NCBI GenBank assembly: GCA_002104905.1
Contig: MCFE01000031.1
Span: forward strand, 124,001-188,000
DNA length: 64,000 bases
Reading direction: 5' to 3'
Origin: Basidiobolus meristosporus CBS 931.73
Lineage: Eukaryota; Fungi; Basidiobolomycota
Below the pieces are notes generated by a model that was not told the DNA's origin, did no database searches, and saw nothing but the letters and a program-made list of their open reading frames with translations. Shown here in pieces: positions 15,828 through 64,000 of this stretch (positions within the stretch are counted from its first letter, which is position 1; the number at the start of each line of letters is the position of its first letter). The translations under genes and the position numbers were made by a program.

Positions 15828-16777
15828 ATGGAGGACTACTACGATGTTGATGCCATCCTTGCGGAACAACAAGTATGATGTTGGCCTTTTCCTCAGTAAG
15901 ACGCCGCTAACCTAGAAACCAACCGTTTAGAGATTACCACTGATATTCAAAATACACGCCGAAGGCTTAGGCTATCTTGATGGATCAGAGGAGCCTGATG
16001 TACGTTCAAGGGTTTTGCTAAATAATCTTGTACCGATTATCCGACTTACTCCATCCCTTTATGTTAGTTAGCAGAGAATACTCGACTTGAACTCCCCTTC
16101 TGGCTAGTCAAGCAACTTGCGCAGCAGTAAGTACTCAGCAGTGGAGAAGTACAACTTCACCGTACTCACGCTGCTTTTTAGCCGAGAATGGTTTGAGGTG
16201 GAGATACCAAAGTGCTACGGAGCCAAAGTACGAAACAGCCTAAGGGCCTGCTCAACCAATGTCAACTTCCACTCACTGAATCCATACTATTACTTGTACG
16301 GATTGCTGCTGGTAGATCTGTATCCTCAATGTGACGAGTGTTATTCGGAAACCAGTCTTCTTTGAAACTTTATCCCTTAACTCTTAACTGATGTTTCAGC
16401 CTTGACGACGTTGACCTAAACATGGTGCTCGCAGACGTAAGCCAATTGACACCATCGAGGAAGCGCATTTGAACTGATCAGTAGCATGTAGGCTTTCAAA
16501 GCACGGATCCAGCTAATCATGGACTACACCCAAACCGTCCAGAACCGAGTCCAGGCAGAATTTGTCACCATATTGGACGAGACAGAGAAAGAATGTGCGT
16601 GAGGGAGTTCCAATGGATTCGAAATAACCCAGAGTCTAACCAACATCATACGTTCATTATCTAGTGTACAAAATCGGCGCGGACAGTCAAGCAGCCCTTC
16701 GTAAATGGAACAACCGAACGCTGTTTCGACTCAAGACCGCAGAGGTTTTGCAGATCCATGGGAAATCGACCTTCTGA
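15828..16777 (+). CDS. PSF3: GINS complex subunit Psf3, 7 exons
   Basis: MEDYYDVDAILAEQQ-RLP; LELPFWL; NFHSLNPYYYLYG; LDETEKELYK. Confidence 0.88.
16320..16399 (+). other. U12-type GT-AG intron in PSF3
   Basis: Donor GTATCCTCA; branch CCCTTAAC and CTCTTAAC, the latter 12 nt from AG; read-through hits a stop. Confidence 0.72.
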
Positions 16778-17918: not shown

Positions 17919-19785
17919 ATGCAGAGCCAACGTGTGTTTAGAGGTTGGGATACTGGTACTATCAAGTGAACATATGCGTTCTGTTTCTAACTGCGTGCCC
18001 ATTTAGCTGCCACTTCTGTTGCTCGCCGCTCCCTCCTCCTCTCCACCTCTAGAGCCTACTCCTCCGTTTCTGCCGCTGCCCAGCCAGTCAAGAAATCCAA
18101 ATGGAGATACGTAACTCGTGGTGCCCTCGGGCTATCTGTTGGTGCTGTTGGTCTTGTCGGTTACAGTGAGTTTATATCCAAGAATAGCCTGGCGCAGTGG
18201 CCACCAGTACTAATCCTTTCAAAACTTAGCCGCCTATTCGCAGCGTCACCCACCTGCTCAAGCGGAATTTGATCCTTCGAAGAAGACTTTGGTCATCCTG
18301 GGTACTGGTTGGGGTTCCACCTCTATCTTGAGAGAACTCGATACCGATAAATTCAATGTGGTTCGTATTCCTACTTTCCTGTGGCCGTCTTGTGTTCTCT
18401 CACTTACGGTTTCTTCCCTGGCTTAGGTTGTCGTTTCCCCCAGAAACTATTTCCTCTTCACTCCTTTGTTGCCAAGCTGCACTGTCGGCACCATCGAGAA
18501 TCGCTCCATCATGGAGCCAATTAGATACATCACGCGTCACAAGAAGAGAGAGGTCCATCTCTTCGAAGGTGACTGTACTGACATTGATCCAGTCAACAAG
18601 ACCATTACAGTGAGCGGTATGTAGCCAAGAGGAGCCCATTTTTTGGCGTAGCAAGGTCCTAACCATTGAACGTAACTAGATAACTCTGAAATCAAGGGAG
18701 CCGTCAGCAACACCACCTTGAAGTACGACTACCTTGTTGTTGGTGTTGGTGCCGAGAACCAGACTTTCGGTGTTCCAGGAGTTCGCGAATACGGTTGTTT
18801 CCTGAAGGAGATTTGGGATGCCAAGAAGATTCGCGCTAGATTGATGGACTGTTCGTAGTGCTTACTTGACCCTTTTTTGTAATGGCCTTCACTCAACGCA
18901 GTTTCTGATTTAACAGGCATCGAGACAGCCGCTTTTGGTGACCAGCCCGAGGAGGAGAAGAACAGACTGTTACACATGGTCGTTGTCGGTGGTGGACCCA
19001 CTGGTGTCGAGTACGCCGCTGAGTTGCACGATTTCTTGACCGATGACCTTGCCGTGTGGTATCCTGATATCGCAGGAAGAATCAAGATCACCCTTATCGA
19101 GGCCATGCCCAATGTCCTGCCTTCTTTCTCCAAGCAGTTGATCGAATACACCGAGTCCACCTTCTCCGAAAACGAGATCAAGGTGCTTACCAAAACCGCA
19201 GTCAAGGAGGTCAACGAAAAGAACATCGTCGTCGAGAAGGCTGACAAAACTCGCGAGAACATTCCCTACGGACTTTTGGTCTGGGCCACTGGTAACACCG
19301 CTCGTCCCATAGTCAAGGGATTGATGGAGAAATTGCCCGAAGCACAGACAGGCAGACGTGGTCTCCTAGTCGATGATCACTTGATGTTGCTTGGTGCTAA
19401 GGATATCTTTGCCCTTGGTGATTGCACCTTCACCAAGTATCCTCCTCTTGCTCAGGTTGCCAATCAACAAGGTACCTACCTTGGCAAGTTGCTGAACGAA
19501 ATTGCCGACAAACAGGAAGCCAGCCAGAAGGAGGTTGCTGAAATCAAGGAGGAGTTGAACACTTTCACATACTCCCACAGCGGATCCTTGGCCTACATCG
19601 GTGCCGAGAAGGCCATTGCCGATTTCCCCATCATGCATGGCAACATTTCCGCCGGTGGGTTGGCCACCTTCATGGTGTGGAGAAGCGCATACCTTTCCAA
19701 GTTGTTCTCGGTCCGCCAGAAGACTTTGGTCTTTGCCGATTGGTGCAAACAGAAGATCTTCGGTAGAGACATTGGACGGGAGTAA
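17919..19785 (+). CDS. NDE1: Mitochondrial type II (alternative) NADH dehydrogenase, 6 exons
   Basis: Presequence; [55 protein letters not shown]. Confidence 0.92.
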
Positions 19786-51729: not shown

Positions 51730-54700
51730 ATGGACTTGGAGTCCAACGCCGCTGGAATCATAGAATGGGTATGTTCTCACCGTCATCTAAATAACCTGTA
51801 GTCTTACATGTATCTTTCGCAGGTTAATACTTTCGGCTCTATTACTCGTAAAGCTGAAACAATTGCCGATTTTTCTGATGGGATTCTCCTATGGGAGGTA
51901 CTCGCTGAAATGTATGCTGTACTTCCAGGCTATTGCTTCTTCTCACTACATGACCGGTTACTTATGCTTTGTTGAACGAACAGCGATCCTCAGTGGTTTA
52001 AACTCATTCGGTCTGCTGACGTTGGAGACAACTGGGTTCTAAAATTCAATAACCTCAAAAAGCTATACAAATTAATTACCCGATACTACGAAGAAATCCT
52101 GGGCCACTCCTCAGACTTACTAGATGCACCCAACCTTACCTCCATCGCCAAAGACGGGGAAATAAACGAAACCTTGAAGCTGGCTTCACTCATCGTTGCT
52201 TTGGCGGTCCAGTGCGAAAGCAACGCAATCTACATCGAGAAAATCCAATCTCTTACCCAGGAGGCTCAGCATGCTTTGATGTTGGCCATTGAACAGGTCA
52301 TAGTTCTTTTTTGAATCGGGTCTGTTGACCACCGGCCACTAAACCGTTCTCTCGATAGGTCATGAGCAAACTTGGTGACGAACAAGCTGTGGAGAAAGTT
52401 GAGAATCCTCAGCTTATTGCGTAAGTAGTATTTGCGTGAAGTGAAGGTGGTGCGAGTTAACATGGTTGTGCCCGTATGTAGGGACCAGCAGATCCTTGAA
52501 TTGGAGGCCGATAGGGCTCGTGTGATAAACGAGCATGAGGAGCTTAAGCATAACTACAACGAATTAATGGAGGACCATAAGCAGCTTGAGTACAAGATTG
52601 TCGGTATTCATTGGGATCTTTACGCAACTATTATTTATTCACATCCCTTATGATATTAGGAGGATTTAACGACCGAGAAATCCGACCTAACGAACAGACT
52701 ACGGGATTTGGAGCAAGTAGTTGCGAGGGCTGACCAAACTGGCAAAGCAGATTTCTTGATGAGAACCGAAATTGACAATCTGAAGCAAGACTTGTATGGC
52801 TTTCTTAGTGACAGTCTAGATTGATTGAGTGCACCATACTTACTTCGTTCACTTCAGGGAACGGGCTGAGACTCAACGTCACGAGGCCGAGATGCTCTCC
52901 AGTCAACAGGAAGGCCTAATCAACGACCTTAACCGCAAGGTTCGCTTTTCTCAAAAACAATGGCATTCATGATTTCAGACTAACTTGTCAATCAGCTTGA
53001 GGATATTTCCAAGAAAGCCGATGAGGCGACAAAATTGAAGGATCAGTTGCAGGAATATAAGCACGCTGCTGAGAAGCTTCAAAAGACAGAGAATGTGATT
53101 GAGAAGTACAAAAAGAAGCTGGAAGAAAGCACCGATCTCCGCAAGCAAGTTAAGGTATGGGGCGTGGTAAAGCTGGGTTCGGGGCTCTGATATATACTAA
53201 TGAGCCTATTAGACTCTGGAGGATCAAAACAAACAGTTGGTTGAGAGAAATCATCACATCGAAGAGGAGTATCGTAAAGTCAGCCAATTCAAGGCGTTAA
53301 TGGATTCCTACAAAGATCAGATTGCGAATCTAGAAAGCAAAAACAATCTTTTGGTGATCGAGAAAAACAAGCTGGAGTTTGAATTTGGAAAGCTCAAAGA
53401 GCAGTACGATATGCTTGAACTAGAGCGAAATAGCGACAACGAGCAACTCCAAGTTCTTGAAGATCGCCTTCGTGAACTGGAGCTTGGCGGTAATTGTTTG
53501 TGAATAGTTTGCTGTACTCCTTGGTTTTAACGTTTAGTTCCCCAGGTGGAGGACTCGGTCTTGAGCTTAACAGAGCTCATAATGGAGATGGAGATTCTGA
53601 AGTTCCCAGCCAAGGTCTCAGTGAGGCGCTGGCGGAGTCTAGTGCCACAGAGCTGCAAGTATAGTACCGACTCCTTACTAACCGATAGTTGATAATAACT
53701 GGTGCATTTTTTCCAGGAAGCTCAAAGTAATGCGCCTGGAACGGGAAGTGCAGGCAATGCACCAGACAAGAAACGACCCTGGAAACGCCCAGCAAATAAT
53801 TTTGTTGGAAAACCTATTGGAGGATTCCAACAGAATGAAAGGCAAATTCGAGCAAGTATGTCACAGAATTCAGGCTTTTCGTTTACCAGCGTCCATACTA
53901 ACCTGGCATTTTAGGACTATCTCAAAGCGCATCAGCAAAACCTTGTTCTTGAAAACGAAGTAGAGATGCTGAGAGCTGCTGCCTCCGGTGAAGATCCTGA
54001 TCGGTATGACACAAGCTGAACCACCACTACAGACATCAGTAAGATGCTGACACATTCCTGCATCTAGTGCCGCCAGCGATTTCGCCCTCACCCTGCGAAT
54101 GAGACTGAATGATTCTGAGAAGGAGCTCTCTGAAGCGAAGGAGAAGCTTGCCGCAGCAGAGGCGAAGCTTGCAAGTGTTGAGAAAGAGCTGGTGATTTGT
54201 AAATCCGATCGTATCCTTTACACTACGAACCAGTGGTTTCACCATCCAACCTGCATTCCTTGTTGTCCTTGATCGTATTTCACAGTGAACTTGGTCGGAA
54301 AAGACAAACTAGACGCTCTGGCGGCCATTCGCGAAGAGGCAGGTGCCGAGATCAACAAGCTTCAAAAAGAATACGATAGCTTGGTTAGTCGCAACCGCGA
54401 GCTCGACGCCGAAAACAAAAAGCAGATGCTCCAGATCAATGAGCTCCTCATCGAAAAGGATTCAGTTCAAACGCAGAACATCCAAAGCAAAGACATCTTG
54501 CTTGAAAAAGAGCGAATCAACAGGTATTGCTGAATTAGCCCGTCTCCAATTCTCCCTGCTGACTGATTACTGGGTTCCAAGTGAACTAAAGGCAACGCTT
54601 GCAGCATTGGAGAGTAAGAACAAGACAGGCGATGCGGAGCCTCTCAAGAACCAGCTGCTTACTGAATCCCAGAAAAATCTCAAGCTTCTCGAGGAGATTG

Positions 54701-57035: not shown

Positions 57036-57382
57036 CGCCAGCCTCGAGGAATTCAGATACCGATTAACCGTAAAGGTGAGAGTATTTATAGTTACCCAAC
57101 CCTTTCTCGAGAATTATCACATCAAATCACAGATTCTACCTCATTCATCACTGCCAATGTATTCCCGTGGCACCAAGTCAGGATCAATATAAGCACCATA
57201 AACGATTTTTCTGTGTACCCCTCGGCGTACCTATTTGGAAGACCGTAGCAAGCTGTCATCAAATATGCCGATTTATTACTAATGATAGCTCAGTGGATAG
57301 ACTAGTTGAGATGATACAATTGGATTAAACACTGATTTAAGTAAAGTCCCTTAGTTTCAGTATGTTCCCTCTACCTTGTATT

Positions 57383-58574
57383 ATGTTCAAGATTACATTA
57401 AAAGGCAAAGACAGTCAGCCAACCTCGTCCAATTCCACCTCCAACAAGTTCAGCTTACTGAAAGCAAAAAACAAACCAAAGCCACGACAACCGGAGATCG
57501 CAAAGAAGAGTGCCTTTGGTGAAGAAAGCAACAAACGCGAAAGAGACGAAAATGAGATCGAATATGTGACCGGGCTTGAAGAGAACCAAATCACAAGGTA
57601 TTTTCAACCAAGTGGCTTCCATCGTATTTCCGGTGCTAATACACTCTTTGATAAGTCTGAATCCCAAAGATACTGGCCCTTTGGTCATTCCCAAGCTAGA
57701 GAACGAGACTTTTGGCCGGAACAAGAAAAGGGCTCACTATATACCAGAGCAAGAACAGAAAAACAGCGATTCTGTGGAGGTCACCCTCTTGAACAACAAG
57801 CCTACCACATACGGTCTGCAGATCCCAACAAAAGCTTCAGCGGAATCTAGCAAGAACACAACTGATCAAAACACCGCGACCGATGTCACAAAGGATGCCA
57901 CTACCACACCGGAAGAAAAACCCGCTGTCAATGCTAATCCTGAAGAAGATTTAACTACTCAAGCCATAAAGGAACTAACTGGAGGTAGGCTTCCATAAAG
58001 CGAATCTACTTGAAGTACCTTAGAGTCTGATTGCTTCGATATATCTAGGAACATCAGAGGAAGGTGCAAGTTCGGAACAGAGAGTATTGCCAGCATTGGA
58101 ATCCAACGACAGAGTTACCGAGGGAGAGCTATTTCGACAGGATGTCGCATCTAGGCCGAGAGAGGTAAGCTGGAGCATACGCGTACCAAACATGTCAACA
58201 ACGCTCACACTTTTTTGTGGCTAGTGTACCCTCGAAGAATACGAGAACGTTCCAGTTGAGGAATTCGGGGCTGCTTTACTTCGTGGAATGGGCTGGAAAG
58301 ATGGCCAAGCAATCGGTAAATCGCGAAAGAATGGGTACGTAACAATGCTTAAAGCTACACTGGATGTTTTCACAGTTGTTCTAACCTCGATCCTCACAGA
58401 ATGCTGAAGCCAATCGAATTCGCCCCACGCCCAAGTTTGCTCGGATTAGGCGCTCGTCCAAAGCCACCGGAGTTGGATAACAAGAACAAGGGGCGTCGCA
58501 GGGTAATTGAGTAACCGATAGCTCTCTCGATAGGCGAAGCACTAACCACGCTTTACGCTCCCATCTAGCCATAG
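57383..58574 (+). CDS. SPP2: Spp2/MOS2 G-patch splicing factor, ~6 exons
   Basis: FRQDVASRP, YENVPVEEFGAALLRGMGWKDG, RPSLLGLGA. Confidence 0.82.
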
Positions 58575-58744
58575 AGATAACCAAGCAGCATGTAAATGAA
58601 TTCGTCTACCCGGAGTTATTGTGAATCTTAATATATTTCTACTTCAATACACAGAAGCCATTTCTATAGAATACGATTCAAAAAGAACTGAGCTGTTGTT
58701 GCGACGCATGGAAACAATAATATTACAGAGTGATTATAGGTGGA

Positions 58745-61106
58745 CTACATCTGATTGGTCTCAGGAATAATGGAGTTTGAGATGTCAAGCAATGCCTCGA
58801 TTGACGGTTGCAGTTGACCTTGATTAGCTTGTAGAATTAATTCGCATATGTCAGCCTCAATATTGGGAAACATGTCTCTTAGTGTAGACAGTGCTTGGCT
58901 ATATTCCTGGTATTGCTGTTCTTGCATCATGGCGTTATGTTGTCTTTGTATTTGGCTGAGGGCACCCGGATATGCTGGGTTGGTGGATGGATTGGGAGGG
59001 CTGGACTGTACTTGTGATCTGAGATACCCGCTGTTAGCGGACTGTCTGTGGTTTTGCTCATACTCATCATCAAAATCGGATCCAATGTCTGAGCCAACCG
59101 AGTCTCTAGCTTGAGGATGCAGATGGTTTTGCTCGGATTGGCCAGGGCGGAGAGTATCATCAAAGCTGCGAGATCTAGCCATAGGCTCTGAGGAGCATTG
59201 CTTCCGTGCAATTTCCTCGACTGCTTTATCGATATTTCTAATAGAAAATTGTTAGAGCAGAGATGTGTTGGACTGTACGTCGTACGTTGCGCTTGCCTGT
59301 TAAACTCTTCCTCAGAAATAGAAAGCTGCTTGTAGTCCATATTCTCGATGAAAGAGATAGCCCCCATCTATTCAAGGTTGGTTTCTATCAGTTAGAGCAA
59401 TGAAACCAGTGCCAGGGTTCGATGTCTCTTACTAGGTTTGTCAAGTAGTACTCCGACTCGGCATGGAGCTTCTCAGGTCTTCTAAACCGTGATATGTACC
59501 TAAGGATAGCTAGTATCAGCACCGGGATAGTATAAGCCCCCCTCATCGCCACTTACTGAACATTTGATACAAGTCGCTCCGGATTAGCGCGTAACACTAC
59601 GAAGATCAGGATCGGAAGAAACTTATCGGCACCTGCTTCAGCATCCACATGCTTCAAAAAACGTGAGTCAAAGTTAAGGATACAACATATGACCACAACC
59701 AAGTCACACTAAGCACTGAAGGCAAAAGGATATCAAAGATCACAATGCAACAATTCAGAATGCAGATAAGTTTGTCGCGAGGAGCCTTGTATGTATTTAT
59801 CTTCGCGAGTTCTGATGATTATGGTGTTCGGATTAATACAACAGCTCCATGTATATAGTTTCGCTGATGATAGCTACATACCAGCTTGAGCAAAGCCCAG
59901 GAATGACTCGTTGTGCTTGTTTACGGGAATATCCAGATGCTCCTCTTTTATCCAGCGATAAAGCTGGACTTTCTGGTTAAGGATGTCGTCTTTCTCCACG
60001 TCGTCAGCAGTGAGAGGGCAGAAAGTGCTAGGGTAAGAAGGGAGCATGAGAAAGAGCTTCTAGCCACTCGGAATAAAACCCAATATCTACTATTTATAGA
60101 GCTTGTTCATAATTAACTTTTCCATTCCCTCCAACGCATTTTCAAAGTCAACTTCGGAACATCTGGCCCAGACTTCACAGTTCCGCATATCGTACGCGAT
60201 ATCCTATTCACAGGTAGGTTTTAGCAAGGTGTTTGCTTTGTGCTGAAACGGGTCACTTACGTTCAAGAAGCCATGGATAGCTTGAATTTGCTCGTTTACA
60301 GTGTATGGTTTACGTTGAAAACTAGCCAGAAATCTAACCAAGTTTTAGCACTCGATTGTTATGGAACTGGTGGAAAGTGTAGTCACCTTTTTAGACTGCG
60401 TGCAACAGGAACGGCACTTCTATGTCGGATTTGGTCCAAAAAGCGATGATACTCGAATTGGTCGGTTTTTTGAGTATTCTCCGGGCTGTCCGGTGCATTG
60501 AGAGCCTTATCATGTTGCATACCAGAAGTCGAGCTAGGCGTACCACCGTAGGAGATTGATTTCTGTAAACTTTCGCCTCGAATTCTTCTTTTAGCAGCTG
60601 TTTTACTCTTGGCTTTTGTTGATTGCTCGTCTGATACTTCGGTAGGAAGAGTTATTGAGTCCTCCGAACTCGCTTGGATCGTAGGTTTTTCTGATGGATG
60701 ATGGGTTATTAACAAAGGAGAGGGAGCTGAATACGCAAAGAGAAGAATCTCAACCATTTTCCAGATTGTTGAGTGGATCGAATTCAGCCACCAGGTCGTT
60801 TCTCGCCTTATGGCCGGAGCCAGATGATGGAGATTTCTGTTGGTCGAAATCATCTGGAATGTCAGGGAAGGCCTCTATATATATTTTCGGCGTCAAAGCT
60901 TGACCATCTCTGGAGGAATTCAAAATGAATGCGAGTTTTCTCAAATAAATGCTGAGAGGAAATACTAACTGCATAGTGCTCTCGTTAGAATCATCAGTCT
61001 CCTGGGGTAGCAAAGTATCCTGCCCCGTATTCAGTTGGAGTTTCTCTTTTAGTTCGGCAGATACACCGTTATCCTCAAAGCTTTCGGGTTGCACACTCGA
61101 CTCCAT
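58745..61106 (-). CDS. VPS9: Vps9 Rab5 GEF with C-terminal CUE domain, ~9 exons
   Basis: YHRFLDQIRHRSAVPVARSLKRFL, KINTYKAPRDKLICILNCC, GADKFLPILIFVVLRANP, EYYLTNL, AISFIE; CUE LRDMFPNIEADI. Confidence 0.9.
59663..59733 (-). other. U12-type AT-AC intron in VPS9
   Basis: Donor ATATCCTTTT; perfect branch TATCCTTAAC 11 nt from terminal AC; joins CIVIF-G-FLKHV. Confidence 0.95.
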
Positions 61107-61464
61107 ACTAATAATTCCTAAGACTCCTGAGCATAAAGCTCTGACTTCAATAAAAATGAAGTCTGGACGATGAAATTGGATAATTTACGTGTTGGATTTT
61201 CCCTAATCTTGATTAGACGTGCTGACGAACTCCTAGTTTGTGACAGTTTTAATGGGTAAATGTAATTCAAGTTTTCACCGATAATAATCAAGTTAAGTTG
61301 TGACTTGATATCTATTCCAGACGAATATGTTCCGAATAGTTTCGCAAAGAACATGAAAAAAAGATTGCTAAAAAAAATACCGTTCGAAGAATCGTGATTC
61401 AAGGTAATATACACTAGTAAGTTCGGTGTATTGGAGTATCGCAGCGTGACAATAGATAAGAGAC

Positions 61465-64000
61465 ATGTCGAACTCGGAGCGTATACTGGTCGAACACGCA
61501 AAGCTTCTGAATTCCCTGATAAACCATTATTTATCGACGGAAACCGCCGTTGGTACCCATGTACCATACATTCTAGAGACTATCACCTACCATGGCTTAC
61601 TTGAAAATGACAGAAACGACGAATTAGACGAGGCGATTCATAAATGGGAAACTCGTGTTACCTCCCTCCTGCAATCCAAAATTGCTAGCGCCAGATGGGC
61701 TGGTGTTTCGTTCGTGAAGATTAGTTTGGACAATAACGAGCTCTATAATCAAAATGTTACTCACTGGGTATCCGCATTGTTATCTTCAGTGATGGTTAGT
61801 GCTTTTGAATCCCTCGGAATTGATGTATTGTACTGTTGACACATATTTACCGCAGAGGCCCGAGCCCACCCCAGTACTCGAGAGTATTATCACTACTCTC
61901 TCCGAGCTTTTTAAACGTACGGCTCGCAAACCGGAATTCCAACGCGAAGTTACCACCGCATTTTTGCCCCGCTTTAACGTATGCTTATTGAGCCTGTCCG
62001 AAAACCAAGAGTTGCTTGTTCGTACTTTAAAATTATGAGGACCATATTCAGCGCGACTAACGAAAGCATTGCTACCTTAATCTAGCCTTGCATCCTCCGC
62101 ACACTGCGCACTTCCGTTGAAACGTTCCCCTCTATATTCAAACCGTCCATCGACAAGACGCAAGCTCTTTGCTTGAGACATTTGGATGGTAGTATGGACA
62201 GTCAGAGTGCTATTGTAGCGGCTGCCAGCGCTTGCTTGGTTTCACTGCATAATGCAAGCGGAAAAGTCAACTCTGTAGATGCTTGGAGAGCGACCAATGT
62301 TAGATTGATTGGTTCCATCCACCAAGCATTAGATTTGCTATTTGACAGTGTAGAAGAAGGTGAGATGCAGCAAGCTTTTAATAGAGAATTGGTTGTTAAC
62401 CGAGTGTTTATTGTAGATTATCAGAAGAAGGATAATTTGCTCAGTTATGATTTCATGGAGCTGCCCTCGGATTACGTCCAGAAGTTCCCTCTCTTATTCA
62501 ACAGGGTTAAGGCTCTACTCCGCTCCTTGAGTGCTTCATTGAGGTAGCTACATGTTGCATTATCTAATATCCATGTTTATCGCAATGTAGTAACTGTGTT
62601 GATCATAGCTGCAAAGCTGAAAGACCAGTTAGCATTCCGGTTAGCTCTTTGATCGATTTGTTCTGCAGGATTTACAATGTATCCGATAGCTCAGTCGTAA
62701 GTTCAGAAGCCTACAATTCTATACATTTTCGGTTACTTACCTGCTTGGTGTAGATGAGCGAAGATAAAGACAAGAGCGAATTCCATGCGTTAATGGCTGG
62801 TATCCCCAGCTTACATGTGTCAACCACGTCTACTTTGGAGAGCCTTGTTACTGCGTAAGTATTAGCCAGAAGCCTACATAGCTGCACGAATATTCAATTT
62901 GATTTCACATGACAGCGCAGGCGATCATCTACTTTGTTACTCCAATACCTTATCAAGTATGATCCTCAAATCCCTCAATCAGCACAAAGGAAAAGAGTAA
63001 GTGATTTGCCAACGAGCTACGATGGCTTGTAGATCTAATGGCATGCGACCCTAGGTTTGCTCGTGTCTCGGCATATGGCTTGGCTACAGTGTGCATCGAG
63101 ACCTTTGGATTCGGATTTTCTTCGATCATAGACGCCTCAATCATCAAGATCATTCTCCAAGATACCAAAGCGTTAGAATTGAAGGCCGAAGATATTTTAA
63201 GTAAGAAGGAGAATAACACCAGCAAAGTATGGCTTACCGACACCTACATTGCCCTGCATCCGTACTTATTAATGATTATCCTACCACAGAAGCAGCCCAA
63301 GAGACGCAAGGCCAACGTTACCAATTCCGATGCTCTTACTGCCCAGCACAAGATAGTGATCCCTTCTTCTGCACTTCAGCATGCTGCTCTGAGAAGTAAG
63401 TCGCTCAAATGTCAAATCCTAGCCGCCGATTGTATTGACACTTGGCCCTGTTTAGCTTTGAAAGCTGTAATCATTTCGTCAGGATCGTCGATTGCTCCTC
63501 AGCTGCGCACTGCAATCGAGTCCACCTTGATCTCCCATATCTTAACCATAGCTCAAGAGCCATCAGAAAGCGCGAACGAAAACATTGAGAAATTCAAGCT
63601 CTCTTTATACGACTGTCTTCTCAGCGTGGTTATTTCTCCAGCTCAACAGATCCCCTTAGTTCTACCTTACGCTCTCAAGCTGTTCAACCAAGGCTTGAAC
63701 GACAGTAGCTATATGGTAAACAGTTTCTTGTTGCAAGCTCGATTCTCCTGGAATGGCTACTTACATTACTGCTCCATAGATCCGTGCTTTTTGCTCAAAC
63801 GCTGTCTTGCTGTGTGATCTGATTATTCACCCTAGATTGCCACCCACCCTAAAATCCCCTCCTAAGGACGATAAGCCTCCCAACGGGCTGCAACCGTCTC
63901 TGGAACATAGGCCAGCAGCCACTGATTTTGGCCAGAGCAGCTTTGTTGAATTTGCACAAACCAAGGCTGAGCCTGCTATACCAGAATCGGTCTCCTCTGT
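61465..64000 (+). CDS. RIX1: Rix1/PELP1-like pre-rRNA processing protein, multi-exon, truncated at window end
   Basis: HKWETRVTSLLQSK..ARWAGV, FQREVTT..LPRF, RPVSIPV, CDLIIHPRLPP. Confidence 0.78.

What the first reader, a model, noticed from the sequence alone, without database searches (positions are those of the whole stretch)
59663..59733. Textbook AT-AC U12 intron in fungal VPS9
The donor ATATCCTTTT, branch TATCCTTAAC and AC acceptor restore the conserved NCC.VIFGFLKH..GADKFLP VPS9 core. I found no GT-AG alternative that does so. GT-AG-only predictors will break this gene model.
Basis: seen in the sequence. Interest (0 to 1): 0.78.

Follow-up and report, generated by a model that had tools for sequence, protein, structure and literature searches.

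The report
Mis-annotated minor-spliceosome intron in Basidiobolus VPS9
A 71-base AT-AC intron of the rare minor-spliceosome (U12) type very probably sits in the Rab5-exchange-factor (Vps9) gene of the fungus Basidiobolus meristosporus, and the public gene model splices it wrongly. This fungus is already known to be rich in such introns, so it is one more member of a known kind.

Summary
On the minus strand, 59733..59663 is a 71-nt AT-AC intron. It has the donor ATATCCTTT and the branch box TCCTTAAC, with 11 nt from the branch A to the 3' end. It lies in phase 1 between two VPS9-domain exons.

The window is Basidiobolus meristosporus CBS 931.73 (MCFE01000031.1). The GenBank model ORY04849.1 uses a weak GT-AG intron instead (59716..59652) and reads IFDILLPSHVD. 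The AT-AC splice reads IFGFLKHVD. That matches the G-h-h-K/R-H found in 44 of 63 homologues that carry the upstream block. The GenBank protein is the only DILLPS outlier.

Nine other fungal loci have an intron at exactly this codon position:
- A B. ranarum paralogue has an AT-AC intron with the same signals and a diverged interior, and no in-frame GT-AG option.
- Eight other fungi (Mucoromycota, Glomeromycota and one Blastocladiomycota) have ordinary GT-AG introns there.

No RNA run was listed, so splicing itself is inferred, not seen.

Two published surveys already count 237-249 minor introns in this species. Earlier follow-ups in this scan found other mis-drawn ones on other DNA of this genome. 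This is a new member of a known kind. The U12-versus-U2 difference at one conserved site is a small evolutionary bonus whose direction is unresolved.

The parts
58745..61106 (-). Vps9/Rabex-5-like Rab5 GEF gene (DUF5601 helical bundle, VPS9 domain, C-terminal CUE domain); GenBank ORY04849.1, K493DRAFT_404578
   Evidence: Pfam exon by exon. P0001 is identical to the window exons. L001 is identical to window 57296-62606.
59734..59811 (-). Upstream exon, encoding (E)LAKINTYKAPRDKLICILNCCIVIF plus the first base of the Gly codon
   Evidence: Pfam VPS9 profile 8-32. It matches Arabidopsis VPS9a residues 145-168 at E 2.5e-08.
59663..59733 (-). Proposed U12-type AT-AC intron, 71 nt, phase 1
59725..59733 (-). 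5' splice site ATATCCTTT (U12-type consensus)
   Evidence: It is 9/9 identical in the B. ranarum paralogue.
59673..59680 (-). Branch-point box TCCTTAAC; the presumed branch A at 59674 lies 11 nt from the 3' end of the intron
   Evidence: The stretch from the box to the 3' end is 17/19 identical in the B. ranarum paralogue.
59663..59664 (-). 3' terminal AC
59557..59662 (-). Downstream exon, encoding (G)FLKHVDAEAGADKFLPILIFVVLRANPERLVSNV(Q); it holds the catalytic-core GAD.FLP motif of the VPS9 domain
   Evidence: Pfam VPS9 profile 39-69. It matches Rabex-5 and AtVPS9a chains and 134 library hits.
59652..59716 (-). GT-AG intron used by the deposited gene model (donor GTGCTT, acceptor TTGAAG); judged wrong
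   Evidence: The alternative enumerated gives NCCIVIFDILLPSHVDAEAGADKF, which is the exact P0001 sequence.

Best explanation
59733..59663 (minus strand) is a U12-type AT-AC intron of the Vps9/Rabex-5-like Rab5 exchange-factor gene of Basidiobolus meristosporus. By analogy with other U12-type introns, U11 would recognise the ATATCCTTT donor (later U6atac), U12 snRNA would pair with TCCTTAAC, and the minor spliceosome would cut after the AC 11 nt downstream. That joins G|GT into the conserved Gly of the VPS9 helix ...CCIVIF-G-FLKH.... The sequence signals, the frame, the fit of the product to relatives and the conservation of position and signals are shown here. Actual removal in RNA and dependence on the minor spliceosome are inferred. 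The GenBank model's GT-AG intron (59716..59652) is an artefact of a predictor that does not allow AT-AC.
For: (1) There is a perfect 9-nt U12 donor, a perfect 8-nt branch box at 11 nt from an AC end, and no polypyrimidine tract. The strict signature is expected 0.005 times per window.
(2) The splice is in phase 1 and restores IFGFLKHVDAEAGADKF. Of 63 library hits that carry the upstream NCCxxIF block, 44 continue directly with G-h-h-K/R. 12 more are unspliced ORF fragments that read IFG and then run into an intron. P0001 is the only hit with DILLPS.
(3) An intron lies at the identical codon position in 9 other loci.
(4) In the B. ranarum paralogue K7432_002527 (L009) that intron is also AT-AC. 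The donor is 9/9 identical and the box-to-3' end 17/19 identical, against 17/46 for the interior and 74-78% for the flanking exons. No frame-keeping GT-AG or GC-AG alternative exists there. Its deposited protein reads IIIFGLLKH.
(5) The Basidiobolus proteins form one clade (98/95 support), so the AT-AC state predates their split.
(6) The species is published as having 249 (PMC10639083) or 237 (PMC11347168) minor introns, the latter paper noting minor-snRNA genes in basal fungi generally.
(7) U12-like signatures are enriched in this window: 5 loose matches against 0.48 expected, reached in 0 of 400 simulations.
Against: There are no RNA reads, because no RNA run was listed for this stretch, so the junction has not been seen. 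An in-frame GT-AG alternative exists and is the deposited model. Its product has a linker length within the range of the wider family: Pfam scores its VPS9 domain at 113.5 bits, against 117-122 for relatives, and Arabidopsis VPS9a has a linker 5 residues longer than the AT-AC product. Other introns of this gene also have weak GT donors (GTGACT, GTAGAT), so donor weakness alone does not exclude the alternative. No minor snRNA gene lies in the window, so the presence of the machinery rests on the literature.
Confidence: 0.92

Rival explanations
1. The deposited model is right: a U2-type GT-AG intron 59716..59652 (or the neighbouring 59707..59652) is what is spliced, the protein carries IFDILLPSH, and the U12-like motifs are coincidental.
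For: It keeps the frame without stops. It is the GenBank model. Pfam still scores the VPS9 domain at 113.5 bits. The 56-65 nt size is like the other introns of the gene, and the GTGACT donor at 59707 is the same hexamer as the gene's donor at 60386.
Against: The product is the only outlier among 63 homologues at this junction. The boundaries are shifted 17 nt and 11 nt from an intron position shared by 9 other loci. The GT donor lies in the part of the intron that is not conserved in the B. ranarum paralogue, where no in-frame GT-AG option exists at all. The chance of the full U12 signature is about 0.005 per window.
Confidence: 0.04
2. Both are used: the minor spliceosome removes the AT-AC intron and the major spliceosome sometimes uses the nested GT..AG pair, giving two protein isoforms.
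For: Both options are in frame. Competition between nested U2 and U12 sites is known in other organisms (own knowledge).
Against: The GT-AG pair is not conserved in the paralogue. There are no RNA data.
Confidence: 0.04

Closest known systems
U12-type (minor-spliceosome) AT-AC introns as catalogued in Basidiobolus meristosporus (249 in Larue & Roy 2023, PMC10639083; 237 in PMC11347168)
   Same: It is the same species and has the same signals (ATATCCTT donor, TCCTTAAC box close to the 3' end). It is short (71 nt) and in phase 1, the phase those surveys find most common for minor introns.
   Different: Those catalogues classify annotated introns. Here the annotated intron is a GT-AG with other boundaries, so this one is unlikely to be counted. 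I could not check the lists themselves.
AT-AC intron of the B. ranarum VPS9 paralogue K7432_002527 (KAK9722622.1; L009 2024-2097)
   Same: It has the same codon position and phase, the same donor and the same box at the same distance from the AC.
   Different: The proteins are only 46% identical and the intron interior is unrelated (17/46). That intron is correctly modelled in GenBank.
U2-type GT-AG intron at the same position in the VPS9 genes of Calcarisporiella, Pilobolus, Umbelopsis, Jimgerdemannia, Acaulospora, Funneliformis, Geosiphon and Sorochytrium
   Same: The position is identical (after the first base of the Gly/Arg codon that follows IF), and the size is similar (60-134 nt).
   Different: These have GT[AG][AGC]G-type donors and AG ends, with no TCCTTAAC box, so they are major-spliceosome introns. 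This is a class difference at an orthologous site.
Earlier follow-ups in this scan on the same genome (s1-190806, s1-209672)
   Same: They also report unannotated or mis-drawn U12 introns in B. meristosporus gene models.
   Different: They concern other genes on other contigs.

Membership tests
U12-type (minor) spliceosomal intron | 5' splice site matching /[AG]TATCCTT | tested here: met
   ATATCCTTT at 59733-59725.
U12-type (minor) spliceosomal intron | Branch-point box TCCTTAAC (TCCTTRAY) roughly 10-20 nt from the 3' splice site | tested here: met
   TCCTTAAC at 59680-59673, with 11 nt from the branch A to the last intron base. The distance range is from my own knowledge of the literature.
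U12-type (minor) spliceosomal intron | No polypyrimidine tract before the 3' splice site; AT-AC or GT-AG termini | tested here: met
   The 3' region is GGTTGTGGTCATATGTTGTA-TCCTTAAC-TTTGACTCAC, and the termini are AT..AC.
U12-type (minor) spliceosomal intron | Signals conserved in related genes while the intron interior drifts | tested here: met
   In the B. ranarum paralogue the donor is 9/9, the box-to-3' end 17/19 and the interior 17/46 identical.
U12-type (minor) spliceosomal intron | The intron is actually removed at these boundaries in mRNA | not testable with these tools
U12-type (minor) spliceosomal intron | The organism has U11, U12, U4atac and U6atac snRNAs and the specific proteins | not tested
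   Only the 64-kb window is on hand and Rfam finds no snRNA in it. The literature reports minor introns in this species and minor-spliceosome snRNA genes in basal fungi generally.
Vps9/Rabex-5 family of Rab5 GEFs | VPS9 catalytic domain preceded by the helical bundle (DUF5601); CUE domain at the C-terminus as in yeast Vps9 | tested here: met
   Pfam on exons and on P0001: DUF5601 58 bits, VPS9 113.5 bits, CUE 34.3 bits on the window ORF.

The most novel reading that the evidence does not exclude
The intron site is ancestral to fungi and is U2-type in Blastocladiomycota, Mucoromycota and Glomeromycota, and AG-ended in other hit fragments of Dikarya-like sequence (taxa not checked). The AT-AC state in Basidiobolus could therefore be a major-to-minor (U2-to-U12) conversion rather than retention. 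In that case part of the record minor-intron load of Basidiobolus would be gained. Annotation-based counts (237-249) would also be underestimates, because AT-AC introns are being re-drawn as GT-AG.
Probability: 0.3. Interest if true: 0.55.

Novelty: new member of a known kind. Interest (0 to 1): 0.3.

Why it matters
It corrects a public gene model: ORY04849.1 carries six wrong residues in place of four inside the catalytic VPS9 domain. It also adds to signs, seen on other contigs in this scan, that annotation-based counts of minor introns in Basidiobolus are too low. The site is a clean orthologous case of U12 against U2 at one conserved position across fungal phyla. That makes it usable for studying intron class switching once outgroups are added. 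It does not reveal a new mechanism.

Tried and rejected
RNA evidence: the look-up of sequencing runs (rna) listed no run, so read laying was never used.

Word search with the 145-aa C-terminal ORF found nothing, because full-length relatives lie outside its length range. I therefore used the exhaustive representative search with the 35-aa downstream exon.

The metagenome scan for CC-x-[VI]-I-F-G followed by ATATCCTT gave two contigs with no VPS9 coding context, which are chance matches.

Paper searches for RABGEF1 or VPS9 together with U12/minor intron found nothing. The one held supplement of PMC10639083 has no such gene name. Whether animals have an intron here is therefore unknown. I did not fetch or compare any human sequence.

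Pfam cannot tell the two splice models apart.

ATATCCTTAG at 19406 (minus strand) was rejected as an intron. It is antisense to a 269-aa plus-strand ORF, and no frame continues after it.

P0003, P0015 and P0018 looked as if an AT-AC intron had made predictors skip an exon. The DNA shows ordinary GT-AG introns and an intact exon, so those are plain model errors.

Joins were only computed inside scripts to check frames.

Full report
**What is there.** The gene runs on the minus strand from 61106 to 58745. Translating the exons one by one gives a DUF5601 helical bundle, a VPS9 domain split over three exons (profile positions 8-32, 39-69 and 71-92) and a C-terminal CUE domain. This is the Vps9/Rabex-5 type of Rab5 exchange factor. 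Between the first two VPS9 exons the sequence reads GTGATCTTTG | ATATCCTTTTGCC...TGTATCCTTAACTTTGACTCAC | GTTTTTTGAAGCAT. The intron is 59733..59663 (71 nt) with AT-AC ends, the donor ATATCCTTT and the box TCCTTAAC. The branch A lies 11 nt from the last base, and there is no pyrimidine tract. The intron is in phase 1. Read-through shifts the frame into a stop.

**Chance.** Each 8-mer alone is at chance level in the window. The full signature occurred in 2 of 400 simulated windows, a mean of 0.005. A looser U12 signature is found 5 times in the real window against 0.48 expected, and none of 400 simulations reached 5.

**Source.** The exhaustive protein search with the 35-aa downstream exon gave 134 hits. 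The best hit, P0001, is ORY04849.1 of Basidiobolus meristosporus CBS 931.73. Its locus in GCA_002104905.1 (MCFE01000031.1) is base-for-base identical to window 57296-62606. Two surveys report 249 and 237 minor introns in this species (PMC10639083; PMC11347168).

**The rival splice.** I enumerated all frame-keeping GT-AG, GC-AG and AT-AC pairs between NCC and GADKF. This gave seven GT-AG options besides the consensus AT-AC one. The deposited protein reads NCCIVIFDILLPSHVDAEAGADKF, which is exactly the GT-AG option 59716..59652. Pfam cannot separate the models, since the deposited protein still scores 113.5 bits for VPS9. The AT-AC product's linker is 1 residue shorter than Rabex-5's and 5 shorter than Arabidopsis VPS9a's. 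Length alone therefore does not decide between the models.

**What decides.**
- Sequence at the junction: of 63 hits that contain the upstream NCCxxIF block, 44 continue directly with G-h-h-K/R. 12 are unspliced ORF fragments reading IFG and then intron. Four keep the register with R, A or S in place of G, one is a clear mis-model, and P0001 alone has DILLPS. The AT-AC product IFGFLKHVDAEAGADKF fits this pattern residue for residue.
- Intron position: nine other loci carry an intron after the first base of that same codon. Of the 71 hits that lack the upstream block, 53 could be scored for the residue before h-h-K/R, and 50 of those have G there, as expected for AG|GN at this site.
- A second AT-AC copy: in B. 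ranarum K7432_002527 (L009 2024-2097) the intron at this site is ATATCCTTT...ATCCTTAACTTTGACATAC. The donor is 9/9 identical and the box-to-end 17/19, against 17/46 for the interior and 74-78% for the flanking exons. No in-frame GT-AG or GC-AG alternative exists there, and its deposited protein reads IIIFGLLKH. That protein is 46% identical to P0001. The Basidiobolus proteins form one clade in a maximum-likelihood tree with 98/95 support. The AT-AC state therefore predates a deep split inside the genus lineage.

**Evolution of the site.** The intron at this position is an ordinary GT-AG intron in eight other fungi (names):
- Mucoromycota: Calcarisporiella, Pilobolus, Umbelopsis, Jimgerdemannia.
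- Glomeromycota: Acaulospora, Funneliformis, Geosiphon.
- Blastocladiomycota: Sorochytrium.

A metagenome gene that is sister to the Basidiobolus clade has no intron there. There are two possibilities. Either U12 is ancestral and was converted at least twice, or Basidiobolus switched a U2 intron to U12. I could not reach outgroups: contig look-ups were exhausted, and no human sequence was fetched or compared. The direction therefore stays open.

**What was not done.**
- No RNA run was listed, so the junction is inferred.
- The joined protein model was not searched or folded.

**Verdict.** It is a new member of a known kind. Its practical value is as an annotation correction and as an orthologous U12/U2 pair. 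Earlier follow-ups in this scan reached the same kind of conclusion on other DNA of this genome.

Noticed in passing
window 54211-54285 (+): GTATCCTTTA...GTCCTTGAT, then 13 nt to CAG. This is a likely U12-type GT-AG intron, 75 nt and phase 1, joining ...EKELVICKSD to (L)NLVGKDKLDALAAIREE... in a coiled-coil-like gene.
   Followed up: partly
window 16320-16399 (+): GTATCCTCAA...CTCTTAAC, then 12 nt to CAG. This is a possible U12-type GT-AG intron of 80 nt. The frame continues as ...LLLVDL / LDDVDLNMVLAD before a GTAAGC donor.
   Followed up: partly
With these the window holds four or five candidates, far above about 0.3 expected from the published 249 per genome. This may be a local cluster or a sign of undercounting.
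   Followed up: partly
window 59238-59296 (-): The same gene has a GC-AG intron (donor GCAAGC, 59 nt) between ...EEEFN(R) and NIDKAVEE. The deposited model uses it, and the B. ranarum paralogue's protein has no extra residues there. A GT-AG alternative would insert QAQRTT.
   Followed up: partly
window 58745-58796 (-): The GenBank CDS (marked partial) stops at 58796, 16 codons before the in-frame stop codon at 58745-58747. Its CUE domain is therefore cut, at Pfam positions 1-36 of 42 against 1-40 in the window ORF.
   Followed up: partly
L006 (Funneliformis caledonium), L007 (Umbelopsis vinacea), L008 (Jimgerdemannia flammicorona): The deposited models CAG8671041.1, CAO3673940.1 and RUP44044.1 skip the exon encoding ELLKIN..RDKLICILNCCKVIF. 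That exon is intact in the DNA and flanked by normal GT-AG introns.
   Followed up: yes
L002 1905, L007 1638, L008 1348 (inside the orthologous U2-type introns): GTATCCC occurs inside the intron in three of the four non-Glomeromycota Mucoromycota loci, at intron positions 5, 28 and 56. About 0.4 RTATCC matches are expected over all eight U2 introns, giving a post-hoc p of about 0.01. It could be a relic of a U12 donor or chance.
   Followed up: partly
window 19399-19406 (-): The ATATCCTTAG here is antisense to a 269-aa plus-strand ORF (18976..19785) and is not an intron.
   Followed up: yes
L010 (JGI metagenome 3300036715, Ga0373634_0071695): This is an intronless VPS9/CUE gene whose protein is sister to the Basidiobolus clade (96/94 support). 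Its source organism is unknown.
   Followed up: no
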